Shown: piece by piece, positions 1,231 to 43,765 of the stretch
Position numbering within the stretch: the stretch's first letter is position 1
How the letters are laid out: each line of letters starts with the position of its first letter
NCBI RefSeq assembly: GCF_006345805.1
Contig: NC_043002.1
Span: forward strand, 8,184,001 to 8,248,000
DNA length: 64,000 bases
Reading direction: 5' to 3'
Source of the DNA: Octopus sinensis
Taxonomy: Eukaryota
Notes under the pieces: model-generated
Databases searched by the model: none
What the model saw: only the letters and a program-made list of their open reading frames with translations
What the model was told of the DNA's origin: nothing
Program-made: the position numbers and the translations under genes

Positions 1231-1834
1231 CTGTGGTAAAGGCGGACAAGAGAAACAACAATTAGAAGGACAGGCAAAAAGAGACGGGTCATTCTTGGCT
1301 TTCTTTCTTCAGTCAAGTACCAGAAGTCGAAAAAAATATAAATATAAATATATATATATATATAACCCTCGTGGCCGATGCCAGCCTCGCCTGGCACCAG
1401 TGCAGGTGGCGCGTAAAAAGCACCTACTACACTCTCGGAGTGGTTGGCGTTAGGAAGGGCATCCAGCTGTAGAAACTTTGCCAGATCAGACCGGAGCCTG
1501 GTGCAGCCTTCTGGCTTGCCAGATCCCCAGTCGAACCATCCAACCCATGCTAGCATGGAAAACGGATGTTAAACGATGATGATGATGATGATGATAAATA
1601 TATATAAATACAAATATATATAAATATAAATATATATATATATAAATAAATATAAATATATATATATATATATAACCCTAACATATATCATCATCATCAT
1701 CATCATTGTTTAACATCCGTTTTCCATGCTGGTATGGGTTTGACGGTTTGACTGAGGACTGGTGAGCCAGATGGCTGCACCGGCTCCAATCTGATCTGGC
1801 AGAGTTTCTACAGCTGGATGCCCTTCTTAATGGT

Positions 1835-4740: not shown

Positions 4741-5069
4741 GTGAGGGCGCGTGGCTTAGTGGTTAGGGCATTCGGCTCATGATCGTAAGGTTGTGAGTTC
4801 GATTCCCGGCGACGCGTTGTGTCCTTGAGCAAGACACTTTATTTCACGTTGCTCCAGTCCACTCAGCTGGCAAAAATAAGTTGTACTTGTATTTCAAAGG
4901 GTCAGCCTTGTCACTCTCTGTGTCACGCTGATTATCCCCGAGAACTACGTTAAGGGTACACGTGTCTGTGGAATGCTCAGCCATTTGCACGTTAATTTCA
5001 CGAGCAAGCTGTTCCGTTGATCGTATCAGCTGGGACCCTCGTCGTCGTAACCGGCGGAGTCTTTTTAAG
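4741..5069 (+). mobile_element. tRNA-derived SINE with 11-bp TSD (AACTATGTGCA)
   Basis: A box TGGCTTAGTGG, B box GTTCGATTCC; TSD at 4730-4740 and 5070-5080. Confidence 0.9.
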
Positions 5070-24188: not shown

Positions 24189-27123
24189 ATGCAAAGAAAA
24201 ATTAAATGGAAGCTTAAAGCCCCTGCGAATGGACAGAGATTTAGAGATATGTTACTTGAAGCCTTTGACGAAGTGGAAGGGGGTATAGCTACACATGGGG
24301 TAGAAGACAACTGGACGTTTCTGAGGGACAACCTGCTGAAAGCCGCTGACCAGATCTGTGGCTGGTGCAAAGTCCCCTTAAGACCCAAAATAACGTGGTG
24401 GTGGAACAATATTGTTGACAGGGCTATTAGACAAAAGAAACAGGCTTGGAAGGCCTGGAAGAACGGTGGTAGCAGGGAAGGGTATCAGACTGCCAGAAGG
24501 GAAGCTAGGAGACAGGTCTATCTAGCCAGAGGGGAAGCAGATAAGAGAAAATTTGCCAATGTCCTGCGCCGTGAGGATGAAAGACTTGAGGTATTTCGTG
24601 TTGCAAGACAGTGTGTGAGAGAGAATCGTGATGTGGTAGGAGAGAAATGTGTTCGCATGGAGGATGGTTCACTTGCGCTAAATGAGGATGCAAAGAGAGA
24701 AGCTTGGAGACGCCACTATGAAAGGTTACTGAATGAGGAAAATGAATGGGATAAAGAGAGTCTGCCGAATGTTGACCCTACAGAGGGACCAGCTATCCAA
24801 GTTGATAGTTCCGTGGTAGCTAAGGCAATTAGAAGCATGAAGGCAGGGAAAGCGCCAGGCCCATCAGGAATTACTGCAGAGATGCTCAAAATATCTGGCA
24901 GTGTCGGCTATAACCTAGTCACCCGTATAGTCAACCAGGTGATACACGAAGGAGTCATACCCAATGACTGGTGCAGCAGCATACTAGTCAACTGCTACAA
25001 AGGTAAAGGTGATGCCCTAGATACAAATAATTACAGAGGTATCAAGCTGTTGGATCAAGTAATGAAGGTTACGGAGAGGGTCATAGCCCAACTAATTAGA
25101 GAGAGAGTTAGTTTAGATGAGATGCAGTTTGGGTTCGTGCCAGGGAAAAGTACCACTGATGCTATATTCCTGGTAAGGCAGCTGCAGGAGAAATACCTAG
25201 CCAAAGATAAGCCCCTGTACCTGGCTTTCGTTGACATGGAGAAAGCTTTTGATAGGGTCCCCCGATCCCTTATCTGGTGGTCAATGAGGAAACTAGGGAT
25301 AGATGAATGGCTGGTGAGGACTGTGCAAGCCATGTACAGAGATGCCGTAAGTAAGGTTAGGGTTGGCAACATGTACACAGAAGAATTCAAAGTAGAGGTT
25401 GGGGTCCACCAGGGTTCAGTACTCAGCCCCCTCCTATTTATCATAGTACTCCAGGCAATTACGGAGGAATTCAAGACAGGCTGTCCCTGGGAGCTCCTCT
25501 ACGCTGACGACCTTGCTCTTATTGCTGAGTCACTATCAGAACTGGAGGAGAAGTTCCAGGTGTGGAAGGAGGGTTTAGAATCAAGGGGCCTTAGAGTCAA
25601 CCTAGCTAAAACCAAAGTACTAATAAGTAGAAAGGTAGACAATCCACAAATATCTTCAGGAAGATGGCCCTGCTCGATCTGTAGAAAAGGTGTAGGTAGA
25701 AACTCTATAAGATGTACCCAGTGTAAGCTATGGACACATAAGAGGTGCAGCAATGTCAAAGGTAGGCTAACTGGGAAGATAGTTTTTGTATGTGGCAGAT
25801 GCTCGGGAGCATTAACCTCCGAAAATCTGCAGAAAACAACTTCCGTCACTTTCCAGGGGGAAAAACTAGAAGTAGTTGATAGCTTCCGTTATCTAGGTGA
25901 CCAAGTCAGTAGTGGGGGTGGGTGCGCTGAAAGTGTAACTGCTAGAATAAGAATAGCCTGGGCAAAGTTTAGGGAGCTCTTACCTCTGCTGGTGACTAAA
26001 GGCCTCTCGCTCAGAGTAAAAGGCAGACTGTATGATGCGTGTGTATGAACAGCCATGCTACATGGCAGCGAAACATGGGCCGTGACTGCTGAGGACATGC
26101 GTAAGCTCGTGAGGAATGAAGCCAGTATGCTCCGATGGATGTGTAATGTCAGTGTACATACTCGACAGAGCGTTAGCACCTTGAGAGAAATGTTGTACCT
26201 AAGTAGCATCAGTTGTGGTGTGCAAGAGAGACGATTGCGCTGGTATGGTCATGTGGCGAGAATGGATGAAGATAGGTGTGTGAGAAAGTGCCAATCCCTA
26301 GCAGTTGAGGGAACCCGTGGGAGAGGTAGACCCAGGAAAACCTGGGACGAGGTGGTGAAGCACGACCTTCGAACTCTAGGCCTCACTGAGGAAATGACCA
26401 GAGACCGAGACCTTTGGAAATATTCTGTACGTGAGAAGACCAGGCAGGACAAGTGAGCCCAGCCCACTTATGAATGCCTTTCCTCCCTTGGACACAAAGA
26501 CCGGCTGAAGCAAGCGAAGTCGATATAGAACCTCATCCGACGACAGACACCCATGCCAACCCCCCATGCTTGCGAAGACATGTTGGGGCAAGCGAAATCG
26601 AAATCGAAACCGAATTGAACCAGCCAGGATCCCATGCCTGGTGGTACGTAAAAAGCACTATCCGACTCGTGGCCGTGGCACATAAAATACTCCAATGCGA
26701 CCGTACGACAGGCACCCATGCCAACCTCCTTTGCTTGTGAAGACATGTTGGGGCAAGCGAAATCGAAATCGAATTGAACCAGCCAGGATCCCTGGTCTGG
26801 TGGTACGTAAAAAGCACTATCCAACTCGTGGCCGATGCCAGCACCGCCTCGACTGGCTTCCGTGCCGGTGGCACATAAAATACACCAATCTGACCGTGGC
26901 CGTTGCCAGCCCCGCCTGGCACCTGTGCAGGTGGCACGTAAAAAGCACCCACTACACTCACGGAGTGGTTGGCGTTAGGAAGGGCATCCAGCTGTAGAAA
27001 CATTGCCAAATTAGACTGGAGCCTGGTGCAGCCTTCTGGCTGCCCAGAACCCCGGTCGAACCGTCCAACCCATGCTAGCATGGAGAACGGACGTTAAACG
27101 ACGATGATGATGATGATGATGAT
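24189..27123 (+). mobile_element. 5'-truncated RTE-clade LINE: RT domain, PHD-like finger, C-terminal domain, repetitive 3' UTR, (GAT)n tail
   Basis: One frame 24189-26456 broken only by TGA at 26046; RT motifs KGKGD, QFGF, FVDMEKAFDRV, GVHQGSVLSPLLF, YADD (25500-25511); LHGSETW, RLRWYGHV, RGRGRPRKTW; Cys/His finger at 25667-25803. Confidence 0.95.
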
Positions 27124-28119
27124 ATAAACAAAACAAAAATAGTGTCGAAATAAAAAGAGTATTTCAAGTTTAAAATAATTTTATTATGCAAAAGCATTTG
27201 AAACTGTTTCCTCTAGAATATATTGCAGTGACTTTGTTTCTTCTTGTACATTAAAAGATCTAACGAACTGTATAGTCAAATAAAGTAATATATCTGACTA
27301 TAACATGGACCTTTCTATATGGTCTTAGCAATATCTAATTTTATAGAACCATGACAATTAAAATAGTATTCCCATAAGAATTGCTGTTTAAGGTAAAGTG
27401 AAGAGTTTTTGTACCACAGTAATACCATCAAAGAGAAGACAAGAACAGCAACAGCTGTTTTGAAAATACAAGCAAGGCAAACCCATTGGCATTCTTTGTT
27501 GAACATAACACCATTCCCACAACACCAGCAACCTTAATATCAATTATTCAAATAATGTAATCATTATTATTAACAGGTATTCAGCAGTCAAATCTTTGTG
27601 ACTAATCTCATGCTAAACGTCCTTTTAAAAATAAACAAAAGGAAAAATAGCTGTCAACAACCACAGACTACAAAGATTTCATACATTGACACAAGGCCTC
27701 AAACTTGTAGGGGAGGACTGTAGCCTAGTGTCTGTTCTTTGCCACTTTGACAGGCAGGAATACATACAGAGTAGAATTTGAACTCAGAATGTAAACATGA
27801 ATTTAAATAATACTGTAAAGGCTGACACACTAAATATCATGATATCAGGTGGTATGATCCCACTGAATGGAGTCTGCAATTCAGATCCGATTCCAATTGC
27901 AGTTATTTCACTTGCTCCACTTTGTTTGATAGTATACTCTACGTGTCATCTGGTCTAATACCATCCATTGGGTATTTATAGAGGAGTTCACTCTATTGCA
28001 AGCATTCAGACCAGGTCTCTAGTCTGAGGAAGATAATTACTTTTCTTCATCTCTCTCTGAGAGGCCCTGACTGAAAGTTTCATGGACACTGACTGAAGTT
28101 ACACACACTATATATATAT

Positions 28120-28391
28120 ATCCAAAATAAGCAACAAGTATATCCAAGGTAGAGTGGTATAATTGTTTCATGCTACTTCATTTTATTAAACACTGTAAGT
28201 ATTACATCAGTTTTAAAATGTGGAGCAATCTTCAGCAACTTATAGGATTTTCCAGTCAAACGGACAATGCACATTTCTTTGTTGCTTATTTTGATTATAA
28301 CCACCCTATTTGATTTATATGGATAATACCATACAAAATTCTGGTGCCTTCGACTTAAGTACCATATTCATCTGAATCTAAATTTTGCTGA
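28120..28391. mobile_element. Second locus of the hammerhead-bearing inverted element
   Basis: Minus-strand hammerhead at 28154-28239 (CUGAAGA...AGCAU GAAA CAAUUA UA CCAC) followed by the same tail in plus orientation (28277-28391). Confidence 0.6.
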
Positions 28392-30351
28392 ACTTTTATG
28401 TATATATATATATATATAAACTTTCAACCTCCAAACATCTGATTACCTATTCAGGAACTCTTCTGATTTTTAGGAGAGTCAAACAATAGATAATTTATCA
28501 CACTGAGGCATGATATATATTTTTAACATTTAATTACAATTTGGAACTCTACCATTTTGCCACCCTGTTACTTTTTCAAGGGAGTCTTTCAGTTATTGGC
28601 TCAGTCATTCACTAACAAAGAAAAACAAAGAAATATAATAACAGTTACAATTAGCTAACGGGAAAGTTAATTCATTATCTCTTCAGCTAAAATTAAAAAT
28701 TAAAAAAAAGCTTATGAAAAACCAGATTTATTTCAACACCTGTTAGAAGGTGGTAATCCCATTTGAAACCCTATTATGTTACCTCTACCTCTTGATTTAA
28801 GACGAGTGAGGTCTATATGCTGATGAGGACATGATGGAGTTTTGTTTCTGGCAAATTAGAATTGTTGCTGTGTTTTGAATACTTGCCTTACTTATTGCCT
28901 TCTTTCTGTTCAAGCTACACAAGTCTTGGAAGATGTGGTATATTCATTACAAACAAAAAAAAAATTTTTCGATACCAAGTTAGAAATGATCATTCCTATT
29001 TGAGAATGAACAATGTCTCAAAAATCCAGCATATAATAATACAATTATGAGCAACGTCTTCTATTAAAATAAATTTTTAAATATCTCTCCAAAACTTACC
29101 ATATCTCCTTAATATTGTTAAGATCATATAATTGTAAAAGCCCCTAGCCTTATGGTAATACACTGCTTTCTTTGAGAAGTATAGTTTTTTGTTTATTTTT
29201 TTTATTTTCTTTTGCATTCCATTTATGGTTTATTTCATCTCACAGCCATTTCATTTCGAAGAATTGCTTTTTATACTCTTTTTGTAAAGTGTGTCTCATA
29301 ATTATATACAGTCCCCACAATAAATTAACCTAGTTCCAAAAGGATGAGGCTTTTCTTGCAGACATAAGACTCCTTCCCCATTCATACACACACACAAAAC
29401 TTCAGAATGTATAGATACTATGCATATTTTACAGTGGCACGTAAAAGGGCACCATTCGAGCGTGATCGTTATCAACATCACTTTACTGGCACCTGAGCTG
29501 GTGGCATGTGTAAAAAGATTCGAGCGAGGTCTTTGCCAGTACCGCCGGTGGCATGTAAAAGTACCCACTACACTCACGGAGTGGTTGGCATTAAGAAGGG
29601 CATCCAGCTGTAGAAACTCTGCCAAATCAAGATTGGAGCCTGGTGCAGCCATCTGGTTCGCCAGCCCTCAGTCAAAATCGTCCAACCCATGCTAGCATGG
29701 AAAGTGGACGTTAAACGATGATGATGTAAGTGCACTAATTGCTTTTTGTCTAGGCACAGGATAATTTTTCCCAGTAAAGGAGCAAAGTCTAATAGATCAA
29801 CCAAATGGATGACAACCAAAGGTGACAAGACTGAAAACTGGTAGGTATTTTAATCTGATGCCTTGAGTATTTCTGCCAACTTGCTGCCATTCTTGCTTTG
29901 GCGATAGTGAATTGGAATTATTTGTCTGATCTGGAAGTATTAGTTTTAAGAGTGTTGTAATCCGTGTCCTATATAGATAGAAATGTTTATGGCAAGAAAG
30001 CATCATATAGATAGAAAACAACTGCACACAGACTTTTGTTTTTGTCCAGTCCTTAACTGTGTAAAGAATAAGAGGTGTTGATAAACATCTTGTTTAAAGC
30101 TTATTCAAGAGGAAGAAAGAAAGAAAAGGAAAAAATATGGGAATTCCATCTGTTGTGAATGCAATGAATAGTGTTTTATTATCATGCAATCATTGGTATT
30201 TGCAGGTGTGAATAAAATATATGCATATTTTGGGAGCAATCCTCTTCACAGCTAGCAACAGTGGAGGAGTATTGGTACCTGCTACAAGACCAGCAGAGCT
30301 GTGTGTCTCATGCATGGACACAACACTTCTAACCAAATATATGTATGTATG

Positions 30352-30459: not shown

Positions 30460-30718
30460 CAATTGCAGCGTGGAAGGTGTTTATAAACCATTTAAGAAAC
30501 ACACAAAAAGCGTTAGATTCACTTCAACATTTAAATTTAATTTGTCAAAATATTTTTGTCGCTTTGAGACTGCGACCTGTTACAAAGTTTTGTCAGTGAA
30601 CAGGTCGCAGTCTCAAAGCGACGAAAATATTTTGACAAATTAAATTTAAATGTTGAAGTGAAATCTAACGGTTTTGTGTGTTTCTTAAATGACTTATAAA
30701 CACCTTCCATGCTGCAAT

Positions 30719-31832: not shown

Positions 31833-33694
31833 TTATAACACAGAATCAAATATGTGAACGAAGAACATGGGGCTGCGTTCAAGTACCAAGAGTTTCCCAT
31901 CTGAAGTCACGTCTACTGATTGGGGGCGTAAAATAAACTTCTGGACACTGAGAAGCACTTTATCAAACTGGCCATCTTTGAAGAGCCGAATTACTCTGGA
32001 TTTCCAAGTGTCTGCCAAATATATGTACTTATTGTTAGCTGAAATACCAAAAACACCACACATACAGATATTACAATGGCTGCTGCTGCCACGGAAAACA
32101 AACTTTAACCTTCCTTTTAAATCTATACACACCAAACAATTGCTATCTTGATCGACAATTAAAATATCGTCTTCCGTAGTAATGGTTAGACATCCAACAG
32201 ATGAAATTACTTCAGGATAAAGAAAAGCCATTTCAATATGTTGTACGACATCAGTATGATCGGAATGAACGGTGAGAATGTCTGCTGAAAGAGAATCCAA
32301 TGAACTGCATACAAGTCTCTTGTCCTTAGTGGCTGCCACCCCTCGGTACTTATAGACTGTCTTTAAGGGACGCCAAGACCATGGAAGTACCATGTTGACA
32401 TGTTGAACAAGGCGGATTTCAGATGAGTATGGAAAAGTAATAGCCACTTCACTGTTGGACCAAACACAAATTCCAAACGGTTGACCTACAGTTTTTAAAC
32501 AGCCAACAAGATGGCCTTCTCGATTAAACTGCTTTATTGTATGATTTACACTGTCTGTGACTATTAGCCGACCATTTGGCAGACTGACTATTTGTCCAAA
32601 GCATCTATAATCAGTTTCATCTGCTAGAGTTGCTGGAAATTGATTCAGTTTAACAGGTTCAAGTGGTCTAAGAAAATTTTCTAAATGTTCAGATCTTTTT
32701 GTATGATTGTCTTTAATTTGTTGTATAACTTCATAACTGCTTTCTACACCATCTGCCTCAAGGAAAATATTGGGAGAAACGTTTGTATAATCGGTAGCAC
32801 TTTCCAACTTGTTTTCATATGTTAAAGAGACTTCTCCAAACTTGTGTATTTCAAACTCTCGAAACAGGTTAAAGTATTTCTGGTTTGGAGAAAATCTGAG
32901 GCTGTGGTGTAACCGTTTTGGTTGTGGAAGTTGAAGCGCATAATCAGGACTCATGTTCTGGTAAATGTTCATGAATTGAGAACACGATGACTCCAAGGCA
33001 CAGTCAAGCGTGGAAAGATGTCGAGAAACTGAATCAACCATATCACGTGCTTGACCAAGGAGACCATCCAAGTAATTCTGCTGATCATCATGCAACTGAA
33101 CAAGATCATAAAAGATCTCATTTTCCTTCTCTTTTAGAACTTTCTCAATCTTCAGACGAATGTTGCAAATCTCTCTTTTTATTTCCTGCATGCTAACAGT
33201 TACTTTCTCTTTCTCTTTTAGAACTTCTTTCACTAATTCTTCAGCTTGTTTCTTTTTAGCAGCAAGGTTCAAACGGCTTGTTTCTGCAGCCCCTCGTTTG
33301 TCTGGATAGACGGTTAGTAAGGAATGAACATAGCTGTCGCATTTACGGTGCATATCGAAAAAGCATAAGCAGCATATCATTTGCTCACACTTGGTACAAA
33401 AGAGTTCCATTTCTTTGGAACTATGGAGAGGACAACTTGGTCCAGAAGGAATTTGAGAAAGTGCAGAACTCAAGGTTAAAACTTGATGTTCCATAGACAC
33501 AGGATCTTTCTTTGAGGCATGCTTGTTGGAACAGTTTGAACACAGCCCTTCACAACACGGCTTACACCAGAAATTGGCCAGTCGTCGTCTTTTCTGCTTC
33601 AGACAAGACTCACAAAAGATACAGCCTTCAGTTGCTTTTGTAAGTGAAAGTAAATTTATCAAGTGATGGTTCTGTGGAAAAGCACGACCCCATT
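31833..33694 (-). CDS. Large terminal exon of a TRIM-like protein: B-box1, B-box2, coiled coil, NHL-repeat beta-propeller
   Basis: Uninterrupted frame of about 620 codons; CxxC...CxxCxxxLCxxCxxxH (B-box1), CPLH...FCxxCxxxICxxCxxxxHxxC (B-box2), heptad region, NHL-like repeats (GRLIVTDSVNHTIKQF, ILIVDQDSNCL, IYLADTWKSRV). Acceptor TTTTGTGTTTTTCAG at 33695-33709, phase 1, so the ORF-track start at 33707 is intronic. Confidence 0.88.
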
Positions 33695-33868
33695 CTGAAA
33701 AACACAAAAGAAATAAATTAATAGAGTGCCCTTTACTTTAGATAAGGATTATTAGAAGTCAACCTAAAATTAGTCCAACATAAAATGTATTAATCATTTC
33801 TGGGATTCTTGACATTTAACAAAGAAGACTTAAAAAAAATATACTAGGCCCAGGCACACGCACACATT

Positions 33869-33902
<34 letters not shown>

Positions 33903-33907
33903 TATAT

Positions 33908-34620
33908 GTTCAGTAAAATTTAGATTCAAATGAATATGTTACTTAAGTCAGATACACCAGAATTTTGTATGGTGTTATCCATATAAGTCCATGAGGTGAT
34001 TATAATCAAAATAAGCAACAAGAATATCTTCGTGAAACGATCGTACCAAATTACCGAAAATATTTTTGTTGCTTATTTTGATTATATATATATAATCAAA
34101 ATAAGCAACAAGGATATCCAAAGGTAGAGTAGTACAATTGTTTCATGCTACTTCATTTAATTAAACAATGTAAGTATTACATCAGTTTTAAAATTTAGAG
34201 CACTCATCAGCCACATATGGAATTTTTTAAAAATTAAATTGACAATGTTCATTTTTCTACTTAATTCCATTTGCCAACATTACAAAGAAGGTAGGTATAT
34301 AGACAGAGAGGTGAATTTCATCAGCAGAAACATGGTAGTATATGATCCTTCCTCATGGGTAGATTTCTTTTCACTGAATTTCCTTTGTCAATTTAATTTT
34401 TATACAAATTCTATATGTGGCTGGAGAGTGCTCTACATTTTAAGTCTTATGTAATACTTACAGTGTTTAATAAAATGAAGTAGCATGAAACAATTGTACT
34501 ACTCTACCTTGGATATCATTGTTGCTTATTTTGATTATAATCACCCCATTTGATTTATATGGATAATACCATATAAAATTCTGGTGCCTTTAACTTAAGT
34601 ACCATATTCATGTGAATCTA
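33908..34620. mobile_element. Fold-back non-autonomous element of two head-to-head hammerhead-bearing units (Penelope pLTR-like)
   Basis: 33908-34227 is the reverse complement of 34406-34620 apart from an internal insertion; each unit is a hammerhead plus a tail of about 130 nt. A related arrangement is at 28120-28391. Confidence 0.65.
34129..34214 (-). ncRNA. Type I hammerhead ribozyme motif with intact core
   Basis: Minus strand reads GUGG-CUGAUGA-GUGCU-(loop of about 50 nt)-AGCAU-GAAA-CAAUUG-UA-CUAC: stem I GUGG/CUAC, stem II GUGCU/AGCAU, palindromic stem III, GUA cleavage triplet. Confidence 0.7.
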
Positions 34621-35049
34621 TATATATATTTGCCAGCGCAGCCTTGACTGGCTTCCGTGCCAGTGGCACATAAAAAGCACCAACCGATCGTGGCCGTTAC
34701 CAGCCTCCCCTGGCACCTCTGCCGGTGGCACATAAAAAGCACCATCCATATGTGGTTGATGCCAGCGCCACCATGACTGGCTTCCGTGCCAGTGGCACAT
34801 AAAAAGCACCAACCGATCGTGGCCGTTGCCAGCCTCCCCTGGCACATAAAAAGCACCCACTACACTCACGGAGTGGTTGGCGTTAGGAAGGGCATCCAGC
34901 TGTAGAAACACTGCCAGATCTGGAGCATGGAAAGCAGACGTTAAACGATGATGACGATGCACATACACACACGTTGGCAGCATTAACTTGTGTCTGAGTA
35001 TTACATCTACGGCAAGTGCATGAGCCTCTTCATCTTGATGCGTGCAAAT

Positions 35050-35794: not shown

Positions 35795-37015
35795 CAGGGG
35801 TTGGACAAAATAACGGAAACACCTAGCATCACAGCATCATAATTTTGAAATATCTATAAAACCATCAAAAGCTTATTTATTTTTGTTTTTTTATTTATTA
35901 TTAGTGTTGCTTAATATGTTTTGCTAAAATTGCTGTTCCTTTTCAGATATCATCAGGAAAAGGTAATTAAAATTCATTAAAATGACAGATCTATTGGACT
36001 TTCAAAGAGGTCAAATTGTTGGTGCTTGTATGGCAGGTGCTGGCAAAACGAAAACAGCCGAAATGTTTGGTGTATCAAGAAGTACAGTCTCAAAAGTAAT
36101 GACAGCATTTGAAAAAGAGGGAAAAACCTCCTCGTTGAAACAAAATTCCAGAAGACAACCAAAACTTTCAGATAGGGACCATCAGACTCTTATGTGAATT
36201 GTTATAAAGGATCACAAAAGTACAGCTCCCAAAATTACTGCAGAGCTTAACCCTGTTTCCACAAAAACTGTTCGTTAGGAACTGCACAAAGCTGGAATCA
36301 CAGGAGGGCTGCAATCAGAAAAGCACTAATTTCAAAAACAAACATTGCAAAGCTTTGAGAGTGGAATAAAAACCTACAGAATTGGTCCCTAGGGCAGTGG
36401 AAGAATGTTATTTTCTCAGACGAGTCATCTTTTACCTTATTTGCAACCACCGGCCGAGTATACGTGTGGAGACAGCCAAAAGAAGCATTTGACCCAGACT
36501 GCCTTCTTCCAACTGTTAAACAAGGAAGAGGATTTGTGATGATCTGGGGAGATAAATCTTGGAAATCTGCTAGCCCAATGCTTTCCCTTAATGGCAGAAT
36601 TAATAGTCAAGACTATTTAAGCATTTTATCTGATCAGAACTGTTTCCGGAGGGAAATGCAATCTTTCAGGATGATAATGCACCAATTCACATAGCTAAAG
36701 TTATTACTGAATAGCACAAGGAACATTCTAGTGAAGTTGAACATCTTATCTGGCCACCACAGTCCCCAGATCTCAATATTATCGAACATTTATGGTGCAT
36801 TTTAGAAGAGCAAGTAAGGATTTGATATCCTTCACCATCATCACTACAAGAACTTGAGACTGTTTTAGCTGAAGGAAGGACAAAAATTCAAACTTTATAC
36901 AAATCCATACCTCATAGAATTCAAGCTGAATTACTGTCCAAAAATGGTCCTACTTCATATTAAAATGAATTTGTTTGAAATTTTGAGGTGTTTCCATTAT
37001 TTTGTCCAACTTCTG
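35795..37015 (+). mobile_element. Full-length (1221 bp) but decayed Tc1-superfamily transposon with DD36E spacing
   Basis: 30-bp TIRs CAGGGGTTGGACAAAATAACGGAAACACCT / AGGTGTTTCCATTATTTTGTCCAACTTCTG flanked by TA; MTDLLDFQRGQIVGA, FSDES, FQDDNAPIH, WPPQSPDLNIIEHLW; stops and frameshifts present. Confidence 0.92.
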
Positions 37016-37039
37016 TATGTGTATATATATATTTTTGCA

Positions 37040-37375
37040 CTCGCCTCCTTATGAGAGCTCAAAATATCTCGTGGAAGCATAATTCAATTAAAGTACAAAT
37101 ATATGGGAAACTACCACCTGTATCATCTCTTGTGAAAGGTAGAAGAGTCCAGTTTGCTGGACAATGTTGTAGAGCTGAAAACGAGGTAATTTCTACTCTT
37201 CTCCTCTGGAAGCCATCTGCTCACGATACCAGAGGGCACACACTCTCCTATCCTGATGTAGTCTCCAGGGATACAGGCATCCAACAACAGGACCTCCGTA
37301 ATGCTATGATGGACCGTGAAGTCTGGCATAACATAGTAAATTCCACTGTCTCAACCACGGTTGAACAATGAATGA
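37040..37375 (+). mobile_element. 3' end of another RTE family; longer copy on - at 60454-60866 with TSD CACACTACAC
   Basis: LYGSETWTL...YTRLLMRAQN.SW...QFAGHC.RA...DR..W..IV; TSD at 60444-60453 and 60867-60876. Confidence 0.85.
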
Positions 37376-37995
37376 AATATATATATACGTAGAGGAGTGG
37401 CTGTGTGGTAAGTAGCTTGCTAACCAACCACATGATTCCGGGTTCAGTCCCACTGCGTGGCATCTTGGGCAAGTGTCTTCTGCTATAGCCCCGGGCCAAC
37501 CAAAGCCTTGTGAGTGGATTTGGTAGACAGAAACTGAAAGAAGCCTGTTGTATATATGTATATATATATATAAAAAATTTTAATATAAAGTAAATAAATC
37601 GCCACTAAAAAATTTTAATATAAAGTAAATAATCGCCACTATATATATATGTATGTATGTGTTTGTCCCCCTAGCATTGCTTGACAACCGATGCTGATGT
37701 GTATACGTCCCCGTCACTTAGCGGTTTGGCAAAAGAGACCGATAGAATAAGTACTGGGCTTACAAAGAATAAGTCTCGGGGTCGATTTGCTCGATTAAAA
37801 GGTGGGGCCCCAGCATGGCCGCAGTCAAAATGACTGAAACAAGTAAAAGAGAATACCTTAGCTGTATGCAAGCAAGGTGATATTTTCTTCCTTAGTCCTC
37901 TAATACAAACAATACAATGGTTAAACTTGTTTTCATGGATGATGGCATTTGTTTACAATTAGTGTGCAGTGTTAAAACAAGGAGACACAAACATA

Positions 37996-38029
<34 letters not shown>

Positions 38030-41000
38030 TCTCTTTTACTCTTTTTCAGTCATCTGATTGTGGCCATGCTGGAGCACTGCCTTTAGTCGAGCAAATCGAC
38101 CCCAGGATTTATTCTTTGTAAGCCTAGTACTTATTCTATCGGTCTATTTTGCCGAACTGCTAAGTTACGAGGACGTAAACACACCAGCATCAGTTGTCAA
38201 GCGATGTTGGGGGGACAAACACAGACACACAAACATACACACACACACATATATATGACGGGCTTCTTTCAGTTTCCATCTACCAAATCCACTCACAAGG
38301 CTTTGGTCGGCCCGAGGCTATAGTAGAAGACACTTTCCCAAGGTGCCATGCAGTGAGAATGAACCCGGAACCATGTGGTTGGTAAGCAAGCTACTTACCA
38401 CACAGCCACTCCTACGCCTATACATAAGATTTTTTAGTTTCCATCCATCAAATCCGTTCACAAGACTCTCGTCCACCCTGGACTACATGGCATCTGGAAT
38501 ATTGTCTCTGACTATAGCTCCAAGCTAAGTAGAACTTTTTGTGTGGATTTCGTAAAAGCCTGCCGTGTGTGTGTGCGCAAGTGAGTGGGTGAGTGTGCAT
38601 GCATGCGTGAGAGTATGCATGTTTGTGTATGTGAATGTATACATGTGAATGAGTATGTTTATATTTGTGTCCTTGTTTTGACATCACATAACTGATGTAA
38701 AGGAGTCCCACTGCCGTGTCTATTTTCAATATTCTGTGAAAATATGTTTGGCAAATATTACTTTGGAAACAGGTGAGAGTTGGCCATAGAAAATCTGTTT
38801 CAATAAATTCTGTCTAACTCATGCAAGCATGGAAAAATGGATGTTAAAATGATGACCATGATTTGTATGCATTTCCTTCAACGATTAAATTTGGCACAGA
38901 AAATAAACATTAAAAAGAAAACAAAAGCAAATAAATCGTGTGCTGGAACGAAAGCAATTGCAGCATGGAAAGTGTTTATAAGCCATTTAAGAAACACACA
39001 AAAAATGTTAGATTCACTTCAACATTTAAATTTAATTTGTCAAAATATTTTCGTCGCTTTGGGACTGCGACCTGTTCTTCTGCAGCACAAAGTTTTGTCA
39101 GTGAACAGGTTGCAGTCTCAAAGCGACAAAAATATTTTGACAAATTAAATTTAAAGGTTGAAGTGAATCTAACGGCTTTTGTGTGTTTCTTAAATGGCTT
39201 ATAAACACCTTCCACGCTGCAAAAGCAAATAAATAAATTAATTAAATTAGAAAGACTACTGCACTTAAAAAATGAAGTTCTTTATCACTCTTGTGGTGAA
39301 GAGGAAATTGACTCGTTAGAAACCAGTAACTCATAATGCAATTGTTTACAAATTGTTTAATAAAATAGAGAAACAACAACAAAACTCTAAAAGCATGTTC
39401 AACCACCGTTAAATACCTGGACTAATCAAGCCAGCAAAGGAGACTCATTATGGTTGCTCAATCTACTACAAATAGCAGTCAAATCTCTAACAAATCATAA
39501 TCTATCGTCTTTGAAAGACTTGATGGATAAGATGTCCTGGGTTTTCTATACCAGAAAAGAAAAAGGCAGTCAAAACCAGAGATCATGAACTTATTTGATC
39601 AAGATTGACTTGGGGGTTAACCCTTTCGTTACTGTATTTATTTTGAGATGCCCTGTGTTTCTTTCAATTAATTTTAAATATAACAAAGAATTTAGTAAAC
39701 TAACTTAGTTATCATTCAGTTAGTGTTAGGAACATAAATTGTGACTAAGGTTTTATTACTATGTATATAATTGTACTCTATAATTCAGAACTTATGAAAA
39801 CAAGATATTTGTACTACAGAGCCAGAAATGGTTTCAGCTGGGTTGGTAACGAAAGGGTTAAACAATAACAACCTTGACAAATCAATGATGTTCAAGAGAG
39901 TTACTTACATTACTAACACCATCCTAAAATCATATTCTCTTTCGTGTAAACCAGATAAAGACTCAATGTTTGTACACACACACACACAAACAAATAAAAA
40001 TTACCTGTAATGTCAACTGACTAATTAGATCCACAAACTTTGTTGCCTTTTTTTTTTGTTTTTCGTAAGGTGGTTGGTATCCGGTACCCTTTAACATCGG
40101 ATGATTATTTCTACTGGCAATAATCTGAGATAATTAAACGTAGTTAAGCAGTAACGCATACAGAAATAGACTCAGCAGCAACAACACCAGATCTTCAGGG
40201 AAGATGACAGCTACACACACACGCAAACATAAATATATATATATGTATATAAGGGATACTGCTAACCTGGCAACAAACTTGTCTGACTGCAGAAATCTAA
40301 TGTTACTCTTACAATAGAGCCATCAGACCATATTGTTGATTTGTTTTCTGGTTATTAATATAAAAATATATTATACCCTGATAATACCCTGTCATCAGGC
40401 ATAGGATTTATATTATACTCTTTTACTCTTTTACTTGTTTCAGTCATTTGACTGCGGCCATGCTGGAGCACCGCCTTTAGTCGAGCAACTCGACCCCGGG
40501 ACTTATTCTTTGTAAGCCCAGTACTTATTCTATCGGTCTCTTTTTGCCAAACCGCTAAGTGACGGGGACGTAAACACACCAGCATCGGTTGTCAAGCAAT
40601 GCTAGGGGGACAAACACAGACACACAAACATACACACACACACATATATATATATACATTCATATATACGACGGGCTTCTTTCAGTTTCCGTCTACCAAA
40701 TCCACTCACAAGGCTTTGGTTGGCCCGAGGCTATAGCAGAAGACACTTGCCCAAGATGCCACGCTAGTAATGCTAGACCAAACAATGCTCTGCCACTTTC
40801 TCTATTATTGTGTGTGTGTATATATATATCTTCTTTTCCAACCAGGCTATCAGATGTTGCTACACATCGCTGGTCACAATGCGCTTCGCATTGCTTTAGC
40901 CTTCAAATGACACCACCTCGCTGGCTAAGCGAGCAGGCCAGCAGAAGAAAGAGTGAGAGAAAGTTGTGGTGAAAGAGTACAGCAGGGATCACCACCACCC

Positions 41001-41164: not shown

Positions 41165-42645
41165 AGGAGCAGAAGTTTTAAGTGTGGAAACAAGGATTAG
41201 AATTGAAGGGCCTTGAGTCAACCTAGCTAAAACCAAAGTCCTAATAAGTAGGAAAGCAGGCAAACCACAAATCCCTTCAAGTAGATGGCCCTGCTCCATC
41301 TGTAGAAAAGGCTTAGGTAGAAACTCTATAAGATGTACTCAGTGTAAGCTATGGACACATAAGAGGTGCAGCAATATCAAAGGAAGGCTAACTGGGAGGA
41401 TAGTTTTCGTATGTGGCAGATGCTCAGGAACAATAAACACTGAAAATGTGCAGAGAACAACTTCCGCCACATTCCAGGGAGAAAAACTAGAAGTAGTTGA
41501 TAGCTTCTGTTACCTAGGTGACCAAGACAGTAGCAGGGAGGGGTGTGCTGAAAGTGTAGCTGCTAGAATAAGAATAGCCTGGGCAAAGTTCAGAGAGCTC
41601 TTACCTCTGCTGGTGACAAAGGGCCTCTCGCTCAGAGTAAAAGGTAGACTGTACGACGCATGTGTATGAACAGCCATGCTACATGGCAGTCAAACATGGG
41701 CCATGACTGCTGAGGACATGCGTAAGCTCGCAAGGAATGAAGCCAGTATGCTCCGATGGATGTGTAATGTCAGTATTCATACTCGACAGAGTGTAAGTAC
41801 CTTGAGAGAAAAGTTGGACCTAAGAAGCATCAGTTGTGGTGTGCAAGAGAGACGATTGCGCTGGTATGGTCATGTGGCGAGAATGGATGAAGATAGTTGT
41901 GTGAAAAAGTACCAGACCCTAGCAGTTGAGGGAACCTGTGGAAGAGGTAGACCCAGGAAGACCTGGGATGAGGTAGTGAAGCATGACCTTCAAACATTGG
42001 GCCTCGCCGAGGCAATGACTAGTGACCGGGACCTCTGGAAATAAGCTGTGCTGCAGAAGACTCGGCAAGCGCAAGTGTGACCATAACCTTGTGGCCTATG
42101 CTAGGGGTGTAACTAGTCCACTTATGCGTGCCTTTTCTTCACTGGACACTAAACTCTGCTTGTGAAGACCAGTTGAGGCAAGTGAAATCGAAATCAAACT
42201 CGGTGACTGGCATCCGTTGCTAGTGGAGTGCTTAGAGTACCTTACAAGTGAGATTGTTGCCTTAACAACAAGCTGGCCTTGGAGCTGATGGCATGTTAAA
42301 CACACCATTCGAGCGTGATCATTACCACATCGCCTTACTAGCACTTGTGCTGGTGGCACGTGAAACATTCAAGCGAGGTCGTCACCAGTGCCGCTGGACT
42401 GGCTCCTGTGCAGGTGGCACATAACAAGCACCATTTGGTCGTGGCCGTTGCCAGTACCACCAAATTGGCCCTCGTGCCGGTGGCACGTAAAAGCACCCAC
42501 AACACTCTTGGAGTGGTTGGTGTTAGGAAGGGCATCCAGCTGTAGAAACTCTGCCAGATCAGATTGGAGTCTGGTTCGCCAGACCTCAGTCAAATCGCCC
42601 AACCCATGCTAGCATGGAAAGCGGACGTTAAATGATGATGATGAT
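41165..42645 (+). mobile_element. Second, shorter copy of the same RTE family (PHD finger to 3' tail)
   Basis: High similarity to 25550-27123, with frameshifts and TGA at the same codon (41667-41669). Confidence 0.92.
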
Positions 42646-43525
42646 ATAGATATATATATATATATATAATATATATATATATATATTATATATATATATA
42701 TTAATTTTATGAATGTGTCATTAATTTTATTATTATCCAATGTAACTATTTAAAAAATGATAATAACAGAATCAATGACATGTTATATATATATATATAA
42801 TATATATACACACATATATATATATATATACACACATATATACATATATATATATATGCACATATATACATATATATATACATGCACATATATACATATA
42901 TATATATATACGCATATATACATATATATATATACGCATATATACATATATATATATACGCATATATACATATATATATACACATATATACATATATATA
43001 TACACATATATATATATTACACATATACATATATATATATACACACATATACATATATATATATACACATATACATATATACACACAAACACATATATAT
43101 ACATATATATACATATACACATGCATATATATACATACATACATACATACATATGTCTGTGTGTATATGAGTCAGCAGAAAGAGAAGAACTAATATAATT
43201 TTGTTTTCCTTCTTTCAACAGCATCGTGTCTAAAGATAGTATAAAATGCAGTCTGAAACAGGCCAGGACAGCAGCAGCAGCTCTGCATTAAAGGGAAATA
43301 TACCACACAGCACAGAGACTGTTTACCAACTTCCAATAATAGTATGTGTGTGTGTACATACTCACACACACACACACATACATATCTATACAAGGTTTTA
43401 CGTATGCATGTATGTATATATGTGTGTATATATATATATTAAAGAAATGACAAGGGAATATATATGTGTGTATATTTATATATATATATTTCTTTACTAC
43501 CCACAAGGGGCTAAACACATATATT

Positions 43526-43588
<63 letters not shown>

Positions 43589-43765
43589 TTTATACATATA
43601 CATATATATATATATATATATATATGTCCAACCCATGCTAGCATGGAAAGCGGACGCTAAATGATGATGATGATGATATATATATATATACAATATATAT
43701 ATATATATATATAATATATATATATAGATAGATAGATAGATAGATAGATAGAGAGATATATACAT
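42645..43765. repeat. Extended compound (TA)n/(TACA)n microsatellite region
   Basis: Directly visible; source of the Y/I/H/C/V-rich spurious ORFs. Confidence 0.95.

What the first reader, a model, noticed from the sequence alone, without database searches (positions are those of the whole stretch)
34129..34214. Intact-core hammerhead ribozyme, sense within the TRIM gene intron, about 440 nt upstream of the splice acceptor
Seen: the minus strand reads GUGG CUGAUGA GUGCU [~50 nt] AGCAU GAAA CAAUUG UA CUAC, giving all conserved core nucleotides, 4-bp stem I, 5-bp stem II, self-complementary ACAAUUGU stem III and a GUA site (predicted cut between 34133 and 34132). Established: minimal type I hammerheads with palindromic stem III occur in Penelope-like elements and metazoan retrozymes and generally cleave as dimers. 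Inference: the TRIM pre-mRNA (minus, acceptor at 33695) would carry a self-cleaving motif that could affect splicing or transcript stability. The long loop II is unusual for this class.
Basis: partly seen in the sequence, partly recalled or inferred. Interest (0 to 1): 0.75.

Follow-up and report, generated by a model that had tools for sequence, protein, structure and literature searches.

The report
Hammerhead ribozyme relic in octopus retroelement
The motif is a real hammerhead-ribozyme sequence, but it is a decaying leftover carried by a small retroelement that landed in an octopus TRIM gene intron, where the RNA would fold into a long hairpin that buries the ribozyme, so it is ordinary rather than a gene regulator.

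Summary
The sequence is exactly as described at 34214-34129 (minus strand): complete hammerhead core, a 4-bp stem I, a 5-bp stem II base and the palindrome ACAAUUGU. It lies sense in the single large intron of an Octopus sinensis TRIM-NHL gene. A chance match is unlikely (about 0.013 expected per 64 kb). A homologous, more canonical hammerhead, which Rfam Hammerhead_1 aligns end to end, sits in a second element family in the same intron of O. vulgaris.

It is not a gene-specific device. It lies in one arm of a compound insertion in a (TA)n microsatellite. Three insertions in the window share one architecture: an inverted 5'-truncated segment plus a sense segment. That fits target-primed reverse transcription from both DNA strands, as in Penelope-like elements and retrozymes. 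The sibling copies are decayed (CUGGAGA, a U·U closing pair, a broken stem III).

Copy A has G10.1·U11.1 instead of G-C, and no Rfam hammerhead model hits it. Within family 1 there is no covariation. In the pre-mRNA the whole motif pairs with the antisense of copy B (-334 against -11 kcal/mol), and the gene holds no second sense copy for dimer cleavage.

Verdict: observation confirmed, functional inference not supported. It is a new member of a known kind.

The parts
34129..34214 (-). Copy A, the finding. A type I hammerhead-like motif with a complete core (CUGAUGA, GAAA, A15.1-U16.1, A17), stem I GUGG/CUAC, a stem II base GUGCU/AGCAU with G10.1·U11.1, a 59-nt helix II arm and the palindrome ACAAUUGU. 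It lies in the inverted segment of insertion 2.
34417..34502 (+). Copy B, the same motif on the opposite strand, with a dead core: CUGGAGA (A6 to G, position 7 U to A). Its antisense is what pairs with copy A in the pre-mRNA.
28154..28239 (-). Copy C in a separate insertion: CUGAAGA, a U10.1·U11.1 mismatch, one stem I mismatch (GUUG/CCAC), and a stem III palindrome broken to ACAAUUAU.
34033..34047 (+). Partial copy D, 5'-truncated inside the ribozyme: UGAAACGAUCGUACC. GAAA is kept. The palindrome CAAUUG has become CGAUCG through two complementary changes and is still palindromic.
34091..34619 (+). Insertion 2. An inverted segment (34091 to about 34238: rc of c-HHR_A-t1-t2, ending at t2 next to (TA)n), a centre (34239-34392), and a sense segment (34393-34619: HHR_B-t1-t2-t3, ending next to (TA)n). 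The arms 34121-34238 and 34393-34510 are 88% complementary.
33909..34086 (-). Insertion 3, same architecture in the opposite orientation. The inverted segment is copy D (HHR 3' end, t1, t2, ending at the (TA)n of 34083-34094). The sense segment is t2-t3, ending at 33909 next to (TA)n. The t2-(TA)n-t2' palindrome produces the sub-threshold mir-3910-like hairpin.
28117..28400 (+). Insertion 1. An inverted segment (rc of c-HHR_C-t1-t2, 28117 to about 28272) plus a sense segment t2-t3 (28279-28400). Its two termini are not inverted repeats of each other. O. bimaculoides has a clean empty site inside a (CA)n(TA)n tract.
33887..33902 (.). (TA)n target microsatellite on the left of insertion 3. The further (TA)n tracts that bound the insertions are at 34083-34094, 34619-34629, 28109-28121 and 28401-28418.
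31836..33694 (-). Last exon of the TRIM-NHL (TRIM56-like) gene. The acceptor AG is at 33696-33695. Exon 1 (RING) is outside the window, so everything above 33695 in the window is intron.

Best explanation
The motif is an inherited, partly decayed copy of a type I hammerhead ribozyme (HHR). The ribozyme lies about 120-140 nt from the 3' end of a short, non-coding, AT-rich retroelement family (F1) of the Octopus vulgaris/sinensis lineage.

Shown. The element inserts in (TA)n microsatellites. All three insertions in the window have the same structure: an inverted, 5'-truncated segment ending at an internal ...GAUUAUA site, joined to a sense segment ending at the element's 3' end. The ribozyme is homologous to a more canonical hammerhead in a second family (F2).

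Inferred. Both nicked target strands prime reverse transcription on TA-rich sites of the element RNA. This twin-priming-like route has been shown in vitro for a Penelope-like element (PLE). The likely mobilising enzyme is a PLE reverse transcriptase/GIY-YIG endonuclease, so the element would be a non-autonomous PLE derivative, that is, retrozyme-like. In master copies or multimeric transcripts the ribozyme would cleave as a dimer through the palindromic helix III.

In this intron the copy is a passenger. Copy A keeps the core by descent. It has a weak 4-bp stem I, a G·U at 10.1-11.1 and no partner copy in sense orientation. In the TRIM pre-mRNA it is transcribed just after the antisense of copy B and is predicted to be locked in a hairpin of about 300 bp. 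Self-cleavage of the TRIM transcript is therefore expected to be negligible.
For: Gene and species. The window is O. sinensis (100% identical to GCA_006345805.1). The motif is sense in the single big intron.

Element anatomy. The motif lies in an inverted repeat. Three insertions with the same architecture are bounded by (TA)n. Insertion 1 has an empty site in O. bimaculoides. No family copy occurs in 75 kb of O. bimaculoides, 68 kb of Argonauta or another cephalopod-like contig. The termini of insertion 1 are not inverted repeats, which argues against a DNA transposon.

Sibling copies. GAAA is invariant in 4 of 4 copies. CUGANGA is kept in 2 of 3. Parsimony gives an ancestral GUGG CUGAAGA ... 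CCAC with a perfect stem I. Copy D keeps the palindrome through a double change.

Second family. F2 lies in the same intron of O. vulgaris (L002 37173-37248 minus, 37796-37872 plus): UUGG CUGAAGA GCUA ... UAGC GAAA CAAUUG U C CCAA. It has G10.1-C11.1 and a GUC cleavage site, and it also has a long helix II. Rfam Hammerhead_1 aligns it over the full model at 26.6 bits, E 5.6e-5. The F1 consensus and F2 share 61 of 88 aligned columns, z=7.8 against shuffles, with a G-C to U-A compensatory change at stem I pair 2.4-1.4. F2 has 145-nt inverted arms that are 100% identical, and a partial tandem of about 400 nt.

Folding. In context the fold is -334 kcal/mol with the motif fully paired to antisense B. 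The isolated hammerhead fold is -10.9 against a free minimum of -12.8, with z=-0.19. A dimer forms the 8-bp helix III.

Literature.
- PLE minimal hammerheads have a 4-5 bp helix I, an enlarged helix II and a palindromic helix III. They occur as pairs on opposite strands 100-700 bp apart, mostly in truncated copies, and show no activity as monomers (PMC4209133).
- PLEs form tandem and inverted insertions and favour (TA)n (PMC8557442).
- A PLE protein nicks and extends both strands and starts reverse transcription at internal sites (PMC11167929).
- O. vulgaris has 30 recently active Penelope families. It split from O. bimaculoides 13-33 million years ago (PMC13282606).
Against: No copy joined to a reverse transcriptase or GIY-YIG reading frame could be found, so the PLE partnership is inferred, not shown. 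Only three and a half F1 copies and one F2 locus were accessible. Within F1 there is no covariation at all: 0 pairs changed on both sides, and 90.6% of cells paired, the same as in shuffles.

F2 was found with a descriptor that demands the stems, so part of the cross-family 'covariation' is there by construction. A homology-based alignment explains the helix II difference by small indels rather than by substitutions.

Two features called typical of PLE minimal hammerheads are missing in F1: the unpaired nucleotide after A9 and the G10.1-C11.1 pair. No Rfam hammerhead model hits F1. F1 itself shows no tandem arrangement. The folding argument is thermodynamic prediction only. Helicases, RNA-binding proteins or ADAR editing could change it in vivo.
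Confidence: 0.7

Rival explanations
1. Copy A is an active cis-acting ribozyme that cleaves the TRIM pre-mRNA in the intron and so modulates splicing or transcript stability.
For: The core nucleotides are all present and the motif is sense to the gene. In isolation the hammerhead fold is within about 2 kcal/mol of the free minimum. O. vulgaris keeps copy A unchanged. Natural hammerheads with non-canonical 10.1-11.1 pairs can be active (PMC3088659; PMC7229834).
Against: The motif comes with a transposable element that is absent at the orthologous place in O. bimaculoides and in a third Octopus species. In the transcript it is predicted to be buried in a -334 kcal/mol hairpin whose other arm is transcribed first. 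There is no dimer partner in sense orientation anywhere in the gene. Hammerheads of this class show no monomer activity and low dimer activity in vitro (PMC4209133). No Rfam model hits it. The identity of copy A between O. sinensis and O. vulgaris is unremarkable, since the whole element is 98% identical between them.
Confidence: 0.05
2. A chance look-alike. The element is a foldback or miniature inverted-repeat DNA transposon that targets TA sites, and the hammerhead pattern in one arm is coincidental.
For: The compound insertion looks like an element with long terminal inverted repeats flanked by TA. The sequence is AT-rich and hairpin-rich, which inflates the number of stems. There is no covariation within F1. 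A fragment with a Tc1/mariner-type HTH domain lies nearby, and O. vulgaris has many Tc1-mariner and MITE families. A genome-wide scan would produce hundreds of chance descriptor hits.
Against: The termini of insertion 1 are not inverted repeats. All three insertions show variable 5' truncation with fixed 3' ends, which is the signature of a retroelement. The 3' ends vary by about 20 nt at TA-rich sites. A homologous motif with canonical G10.1-C11.1 and a GUC site, recognised end to end by Rfam Hammerhead_1, occurs in a different element family with otherwise unrelated flanks, and that element is partly tandem. The inferred ancestral F1 motif is a better hammerhead than any present copy.
Confidence: 0.1
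3. The biologically relevant feature at this locus is the long intronic double-stranded RNA hairpin, not the ribozyme. It could be a substrate for ADAR editing or for small-RNA production. The hammerhead is irrelevant baggage. This reading is compatible with the best explanation for the origin of the element.
For: The predicted hairpin is about 300 bp and near-perfect, at -334 kcal/mol. Its sub-structures score as miRNA-precursor-like hairpins below threshold (mir-3910 at 46.5 bits). From established knowledge, coleoid cephalopods edit double-stranded RNA extensively.
Against: No expression, editing or small-RNA data could be examined. All the miRNA hits are far below their gathering scores and simply reflect perfect inverted repeats. 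Such transposon hairpins are common in this window.
Confidence: 0.1

Closest known systems
Minimal type I hammerheads of Penelope-like elements (Cervera & de la Peña 2014, PMC4209133)
   Same: Complete CUGANGA/GAAA core. Short helix I of 4 bp. Enlarged helix II. Palindromic 15.2-16.2 and loop 3, implying dimer action. Mostly isolated, 5'-truncated copies. Pairs of motifs on opposite strands a few hundred bp apart. Complex inverted and tandem insertions with a (TA)n bias (PMC8557442).
   Different: There is no unpaired nucleotide between A9 and 10.1. F1 has G10.1·U11.1 instead of the conserved G-C. Helix II is far longer, with an arm of 49-59 nt against 7-8 bp. No copy is shown to be linked to a reverse transcriptase/GIY-YIG reading frame.
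Metazoan non-LTR retrozymes (Cervera & de la Peña 2020, PMC7229834; Li et al. 2026 bioRxiv 10.64898/2026.07.22.740005)
   Same: Short (a few hundred nt), non-coding, low-GC (29-34%) repeats that carry a type I hammerhead with a weak palindromic helix III. F2 shows a partial tandem with a period of about 400 nt. Retrozymes co-occur with PLEs and are proposed to be PLE derivatives.
   Different: F1 is not tandem in any copy seen. No loop 1-loop 2 tertiary contact is recognisable. Circular RNA was not tested. In vertebrates retrozymes are reported to be depleted from introns, whereas these copies are intronic.
Rfam Hammerhead_1 (RF00163), e.g. the Schistosoma Sm-alpha and newt satellite 2 ribozymes
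   Same: F2 aligns to the whole 45-position model (UCUUGG CUGAAGAG ... GCGAAAC AAUU GUC CCAAAA). The type I topology and the GUC site are the same.
   Different: F2 scores 26.6 bits, below the gathering score of 34, because of a 37-nt insertion in loop II. F1, the finding itself, gives no hit at E<=10.
Conserved intronic hammerheads of amniotes (HH9/HH10)
   Same: Sense orientation inside an intron of a protein-coding gene.
   Different: Those are single-copy, syntenic and ultraconserved across orders, and they fold stably as monomers. This one is a lineage-specific transposon insertion, absent in O. bimaculoides, with decaying siblings and a monomer fold no more stable than shuffled sequence (z=-0.19).
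L1 twin priming / 5'-inverted LINE insertions
   Same: The architecture is an inverted upstream segment joined to a sense 3' segment, with a short overlap at the junction. Here the t2 block is duplicated in insertion 1.
   Different: The target is (TA)n and the internal priming site is a fixed TA-rich site. The likely enzyme is a PLE, which extends both strands (PMC11167929), rather than an APE-type LINE.

Membership tests
Hammerhead ribozyme, type I | Conserved core: C3 U4 G5 A6 N7 G8 A9, G12 A13 A14, A15.1-U16.1, H17 | tested here: met
   Copy A has CUGAUGA ... GAAA ... U-A, then the cut before C. Copy B fails (CUGGAGA). Copy C fits CUGANGA.
Hammerhead ribozyme, type I | Three helices around the core, with helix I open-ended | tested here: met
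   Stem I has 4 bp (one G·U). Stem II has a 5-bp base plus an extension. Stem III is 2 bp with a 4-nt loop, or 8 bp in the dimer. The constrained hammerhead fold is -10.9 kcal/mol against a free minimum of -12.8.
Hammerhead ribozyme, type I | G10.1-C11.1 closing pair. It is the most conserved pair after 15.1-16.1 (PMC3088659) | tested here: not met
   G·U in copies A and B, U·U in copy C. It is met in the related family F2.
Hammerhead ribozyme, type I | Match to the Rfam covariance models (RF00163 and other hammerhead families) at gathering score | tested here: not met
   No hammerhead hit at gathering or at E<=10 or E<=5. F2 reaches 26.6 bits against a gathering score of 34.
Hammerhead ribozyme, type I | Loop 1-loop 2 tertiary contacts of fast, canonical type I ribozymes | tested here: not met
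   Helix I cannot be extended beyond 4 bp and has no internal loop (inspection). This is as in minimal PLE hammerheads.
Hammerhead ribozyme, type I | Site-specific self-cleavage giving 2',3'-cyclic phosphate and 5'-OH ends | not testable with these tools
   It needs in vitro transcription or mapping of RNA ends.
PLE minimal hammerhead (Cervera & de la Peña 2014) | Short helix I (4-5 bp), enlarged helix II, palindromic 15.2-16.2 and loop 3 | tested here: met
   Helix I is 4 bp, helix II has about 20 bp in a 59-nt arm, and the palindrome is ACAAUUGU (criteria).
PLE minimal hammerhead (Cervera & de la Peña 2014) | Unpaired nucleotide between A9 and G10.1 | tested here: not met
   A9 is followed directly by the paired G10.1 in both F1 and F2 (criterion).
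PLE minimal hammerhead (Cervera & de la Peña 2014) | Located in the pseudo-LTR of an element that encodes a reverse transcriptase and a GIY-YIG endonuclease | tested here: inconclusive
   There is no RT or EN domain in or next to any copy. All accessible copies are short. A genome-wide search was not possible.
PLE minimal hammerhead (Cervera & de la Peña 2014) | Consensus families with compensatory changes within a genome | tested here: inconclusive
   Within F1 no pair changes on both sides. Between F1 and F2 there is one clear compensatory pair in stem I, and helix II is kept despite indels. Only five motifs were available.
Metazoan non-LTR retrozyme | Type I hammerhead inside head-to-tail tandem repeats of 150-450 bp | tested here: not met
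   F1 shows only inverted arrangements, never tandem ones. F2 has a 1.4-unit partial tandem with a period of about 400 nt.
Metazoan non-LTR retrozyme | Expression as small circular RNAs | not testable with these tools
   No transcriptome could be searched by nucleotide sequence.
MITE / foldback DNA transposon | Both termini of every copy are inverted repeats of each other, with a fixed-length target-site duplication | tested here: not met
   Insertion 1 ends with CCAAAATAAGC... on one side and ...GAACTTTTATG on the other, which are not inverted repeats. The target-site duplication cannot be read, because every insertion lies in (TA)n.

The most novel reading that the evidence does not exclude
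F1 and F2 may represent an undescribed cephalopod lineage of non-autonomous retroelements that target (TA)n and carry a hammerhead ribozyme. They would be retrozyme-like PLE derivatives. Their type I ribozyme has an unusually long helix II arm of 50-60 nt. They would still be transposing in O. vulgaris, since the F2 arms are 100% identical and the insertion is absent from the O. sinensis assembly. They would produce self-cleaved or circular RNAs and would seed long double-stranded RNA hairpins in introns of neural genes.
Probability: 0.4. Interest if true: 0.4.

Novelty: new member of a known kind. Interest (0 to 1): 0.25.

Why it matters
The find matters little for TRIM gene regulation. The motif is a transposon passenger and is predicted to be structurally silenced.

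Its modest value lies elsewhere. First, it documents hammerhead-bearing retroelements in octopus, for which I found no report in the searchable literature. One family looks very young in O. vulgaris. Second, the ribozyme variant, with its long helix II and a G·U at 10.1-11.1, escapes the Rfam models. Genome annotations based on Rfam gathering scores would therefore miss the whole family. Third, three insertions with the same 'inverted segment plus sense segment' structure in (TA)n are a clean natural record of reverse transcription primed from both target strands, which has so far been shown for a Penelope-like element only in vitro.

It is also a caution for motif-based scans. An intact hammerhead core inside an inverted repeat should be folded in its transcript context before any function is inferred.

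Tried and rejected
Attempts to obtain more family copies.
- A homology search with the window's LINE reverse transcriptase ORF, meant to sample more octopus loci, listed only hits of 61% identity or less, none carrying an octopus name.
- A search with concatenated stop-to-stop translations of the element gave nothing.
- Exact-pattern scans of the metagenome, prokaryotic-genome and viral collections with the 22-mer shared by all copies gave 0 hits.
- nhmmer and blastn of F1 and F2 against O. bimaculoides (75 kb), Argonauta hians (68 kb) and an ENA cephalopod-like contig (22 kb) gave no copies. nhmmer with the F1 profile found none in three Logan contigs either.

Attempts to link the element to a protein.
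- Pfam found no domain in the element's ORFs, and no RT or GIY-YIG domain near F1. ORF listing around F2 showed only microsatellite-encoded ORFs and one 187-aa ORF that I did not scan.
- Supplementary transposon libraries of the octopus repeat paper and of the PLE paper are not held as text.

Ideas considered and rejected.
- A C/D-box snoRNA reading, from the weak archaeal sRNA hits on UGAUGA...CUGA at 8-10 bits. These are chance hits.
- A miRNA-precursor reading of the t2-(TA)n-t2' palindrome (mir-3910 at 46.5 bits against a gathering score of 95). This is an artefact of a perfect inverted repeat.
- A MITE reading (see the rival explanations).
- An alternative register with a bulged G after A9. 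It would leave U10.1·U11.1, so it was rejected.

MAFFT misaligns helix II between F1 and F2. I therefore built no covariance model, and I compared pairs by position from the core.
Full report
1. Observation

The minus strand from 34214 to 34129 reads GUGG-CUGAUGA-GUGCU-(49 nt)-AGCAU-GAAA-CAAUUG-U-A-CUAC, exactly as reported. In standard numbering the core is complete: C3 to A9, G12 to A14, A15.1-U16.1 and A17. The predicted cut lies between 34133 and 34132.

Three details refine the description.
- The 10.1-11.1 pair is G·U rather than G-C, and stem I contains a G·U.
- The '50-nt loop II' folds into an imperfect extension of helix II.
- Stem III is a 2-bp stem with a palindromic tetraloop in a monomer. 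It becomes an 8-bp helix only in a homodimer. That homodimer is the predicted minimum-free-energy dimer (-31.4 kcal/mol).

2. Chance

An RNAmotif-style descriptor finds this as the only hit on either strand of the window. In 300 first-order Markov simulations of the window it gives 0.013 hits per 64 kb at minimum stems of 4/4/2, and none at the observed 4/5/4. That is unlikely for one window, but not for a 2.7-Gb genome (genome size from my own knowledge). The decisive evidence has to come from relatives.

The isolated RNA is not unusually stable: the minimum free energy is -13 kcal/mol, z=-0.19 against shuffles. The hammerhead-constrained fold is -10.9 against a free minimum of -12.8.

No Rfam hammerhead family matches. 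This holds at gathering score over the window, at E<=10 over 1.3 kb or 116 nt, and at E<=5 over the whole window with lax filters.

3. Where this is

The 620-residue exon below the motif is 98% identical to an O. bimaculoides RING/B-box/NHL protein. The cluster also holds the TRIM56-like protein of O. vulgaris and O. sinensis. The O. sinensis locus (GCA_006345805.1, L003) is 100% identical to the window. O. vulgaris (L002) is about 97% identical and O. bimaculoides (L001) about 92%.

The gene has two coding exons. Exon 1 (RING) lies 38-53 kb upstream and outside the window. The acceptor AG ends at 33695. The motif is therefore intronic and sense, 434 nt from the acceptor, as claimed.

4. What the motif sits in

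The motif is one arm of an inverted repeat. Arms 34121-34238 and 34393-34510 are 88% complementary. Outer arms 33918-34028 and 34512-34623 are 86-92% complementary. A further copy lies at 28117-28400.

I read the units in ribozyme sense as c-HHR-t1-t2-t3. Here t2 is ...TTGTTGCTTATTTTGATTATA and t3 ends ...GAATCTAAATTTTGCTGAAC.... On that reading the window holds three insertions with one architecture. Each has an inverted segment that stops at the end of t2 against (TA)n. It is joined to a sense segment that runs to the end of t3 against (TA)n. Both segments are 5'-truncated to different extents.
- Insertion 1 (28117-28400): inverted c-HHR_C-t1-t2, then sense t2-t3.
- Insertion 2 (34091-34619): inverted c-HHR_A-t1-t2, then a centre, then sense HHR_B-t1-t2-t3.
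- Insertion 3 (33909-34086): inverted 'GAAACGAUCGUACC'-t1-t2 (copy D), then sense t2-t3.

The termini of insertion 1 are not inverted repeats of each other, and the t3 ends differ by about 20 nt between copies. Fixed 3' ends with variable 5' ends mark a retroelement, not a cut-and-paste transposon.

Insertion 1 has a clean empty site in O. bimaculoides inside a (CA)n(TA)n tract. No family copy exists in the 75-kb orthologous O. bimaculoides locus, in Argonauta hians, or in another cephalopod-like contig. A Logan contig from a third Octopus species carries a SINE instead, just upstream of the exon. Both insertions are shared by O. vulgaris and O. sinensis. They therefore date from after the split from O. 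bimaculoides, which is put at 13-33 million years ago (PMC13282606).

5. Is the hammerhead real at the family level?

Aligned copies:
- A: GUGG CUGAUGA GUGCU ... AGCAU GAAA CAAUUG UA CUAC.
- B: identical except CUGGAGA. The A6-to-G change should be inactivating.
- C: GUUG CUGAAGA UUGCU ... AGCAU GAAA CAAUUA UA CCAC.
- D: only ...GAAA CGAUCG UA CCAA.

GAAA is invariant in all four. CUGANGA is kept in two of three. Parsimony gives an ancestor GUGG-CUGAAGA-...-CCAC with a perfect 4-bp stem I, which is a better hammerhead than any living copy. Copy D keeps the palindrome through two complementary substitutions.

Formal pair counting within F1 shows no covariation: 0 pairs changed on both sides, and 90.6% of cells paired, the same as in shuffles. 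The copies are too few and too similar for this test.

A relaxed descriptor run over all fetched loci gave the key extra evidence. In the same intron of O. vulgaris (L002 37173-37248 on minus, 37796-37872 on plus) a different element carries UUGG-CUGAAGA-GCUA-(41 nt)-UAGC-GAAA-CAAUUG-U-C-CCAA. It has G10.1-C11.1, a GUC site, a perfect stem I, the same palindrome and again a long helix II with the same UGUAA...UUACA tip.

Rfam Hammerhead_1 aligns this motif over all 45 model positions at 26.6 bits (gathering score 34), E=5.6e-5 for the 121 nt searched. The F1 consensus and this F2 motif share 61 of 88 aligned columns, z=7.8 against shuffles. Their flanks are unrelated.

Stem I pair 2.4-1.4 is G-C in F1 and U-A in F2. 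At the base of helix II, F1 differs by small indels that create the G·U.

The F2 element lies in a giant (TA)n/(A)n tract. It has inverted arms of 145 nt at 100% identity and a partial tandem with a period of about 400 nt. It is absent from the O. sinensis assembly. It is therefore very young, unless that assembly has collapsed the region.

A caveat applies. F2 was found by a descriptor that requires stems, so part of the agreement is by construction. The shared 11-mer GAAACAAUUGU, the homology of helix II and the Rfam alignment are not by construction.

6. Behaviour in the TRIM transcript

Folded as the pre-mRNA strand, 34635 to 33905 forms a single long hairpin of -334 kcal/mol. Essentially the whole of copy A is paired with the antisense of copy B. 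That includes five of the seven CUGAUGA positions; the other two face the two substitutions in B.

The antisense of B is transcribed first, so the competitor strand is already present when A emerges. This last step is inference. The hammerhead fold is worth about -11 kcal/mol.

Hammerheads of this class need a second sense copy to build helix III. Their reported activity is nil as monomers and low as dimers (PMC4209133). No second sense F1 copy exists anywhere in the gene. Copy C is sense, but it lies 3.6 kb beyond the stop codon and has a degraded stem II and stem III.

7. Mechanism proposed

Shown: a hammerhead-bearing, non-coding, AT-rich (29-34% GC) retroelement lineage that targets (TA)n and leaves insertions made of an inverted plus a sense segment.

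Inferred:
- The two 3'-OH ends of a cleaved (TA)n target anneal to TA-rich sites of the element RNA, namely the 3' end of t3 and the internal ...GAUUAUA of t2. Both prime reverse transcription. This yields the inverted and sense segments, which are then joined at variable 5' points.
- This matches the finding that a purified PLE protein nicks and extends both strands and initiates at internal RNA sites (PMC11167929).
- It also matches the known PLE habit of tandem and inverted insertions and a (TA)n preference (PMC8557442).
- O. vulgaris has 30 recently active Penelope families.
- In source copies the ribozyme would process multimeric transcripts as dimers.

The link to a PLE enzyme is not demonstrated. 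No RT or EN reading frame was found near any copy.

8. Comparison with what is known

The closest known classes are the minimal hammerheads of PLEs and the metazoan non-LTR retrozymes. The features that are met and not met are listed in the membership table.

F1 works like these classes, in architecture and in its implied dimer mode. It fails two features typical of PLE minimal hammerheads (the bulge after A9 and the G10.1-C11.1 pair) and the tandem criterion of retrozymes. I therefore file it as a hammerhead relic of a PLE/retrozyme-type element and not as a proven member of either family.

It differs fundamentally from the conserved intronic hammerheads of amniotes. It is lineage-specific, borne by a transposon, and decaying.

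9. Novelty and verdict

Hammerheads in metazoan retroelements are well known and occur in thousands of copies per genome. An intronic relic is ordinary.

The points that are mildly new:
- I found no report for octopus.
- Helix II is unusually long, and as a result Rfam does not detect the family.
- The three insertions are a tidy natural record of priming from both strands into (TA)n.

Novelty: new member of a known kind. Interest: about 0.25.

10. Dead ends

I could not get more copies. The two remaining protein searches gave no octopus loci, and pattern scans of the three DNA collections gave nothing. The transposon libraries of the relevant papers are not held as text. MAFFT could not align helix II across the two families, so no covariance model was built.

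Noticed in passing
L002 (O. vulgaris) 37013-38196; ribozymes at 37173-37248 (-) and 37796-37872 (+): A second hammerhead-bearing element family (F2) lies in the same TRIM intron of O. vulgaris. It has canonical G10.1-C11.1 and a GUC site, 145-nt inverted arms at 100% identity, and a partial tandem of about 400 nt. Rfam Hammerhead_1 scores it at 26.6 bits. It is absent from the O. sinensis and O. bimaculoides loci, so it looks like a very recent insertion.
   Followed up: partly
L002 35600-42000, compared with window about 42750-43700: The long-read O. vulgaris assembly has about 6 kb of (TA)n and poly(A) tracts where the O. sinensis assembly has under 1 kb of (TA)n/(CA)n. This is either a real microsatellite expansion or a collapse in the older assembly. 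It limits any presence/absence call for F2.
   Followed up: no
window 24189-26456 (+): A LINE-type reverse transcriptase ORF of 619 aa, with 133 aa more after a stop. It has RVT_1 and a PHD-like zinc finger. The best database relatives listed are only 47-61% identical and none carries an octopus name. A related 3' fragment lies at 41448-42044.
   Followed up: partly
window 34630-34860 (+): About three tandem copies of a 62-67-nt unit (TGGCACATAAAAAGCACC...) lie directly to the right of the element. Related sequence recurs at 26500-27080 and 29300-29650, and in O. bimaculoides (L001 about 44800). It is probably an octopus SINE-derived repeat.
   Followed up: no
window 35982-36197 (+): This ORF has a helix-turn-helix domain of the Tc1/mariner transposase type (HTH_28 and HTH_23, plus a weak Sleeping Beauty HTH hit). 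The next ORF in line (36464-36694) gave no Pfam hit. It is probably a degraded Tc1/mariner copy in the same intron.
   Followed up: partly
window 1510-1771; 30522-30659; 39027-39153: Other long, near-perfect palindromic hairpins score as plant or animal miRNA precursors far below gathering score (MIR7533 at 93 bits, MIR841 at 64, mir-3913 at 61). They are probably further inverted-repeat transposons. The one at 39.0 kb carries mirrored ORFs on both strands.
   Followed up: no
window 34320-34326 (-): A second CUGAUGA heptamer lies in the centre of insertion 2 (UUUCUGCUGAUGAAAUUC). My descriptor did not report a hammerhead there, so I treated it as chance.
   Followed up: partly
window 4747-4816 (+): A sub-threshold tRNA-like match (25.1 bits against a gathering score of 29). 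It may be the head of a tRNA-derived SINE.
   Followed up: no
L001 about 63200-63240 and L008 150-220, compared with window about 33856: O. bimaculoides and a third Octopus species (Logan run SRR11869384) share a SINE-like insertion (GGCTGTGTGGTAAGAAGC...) just upstream of the last exon. There O. sinensis and O. vulgaris have the (CA)n(TA)n tract that received the hammerhead element.
   Followed up: partly
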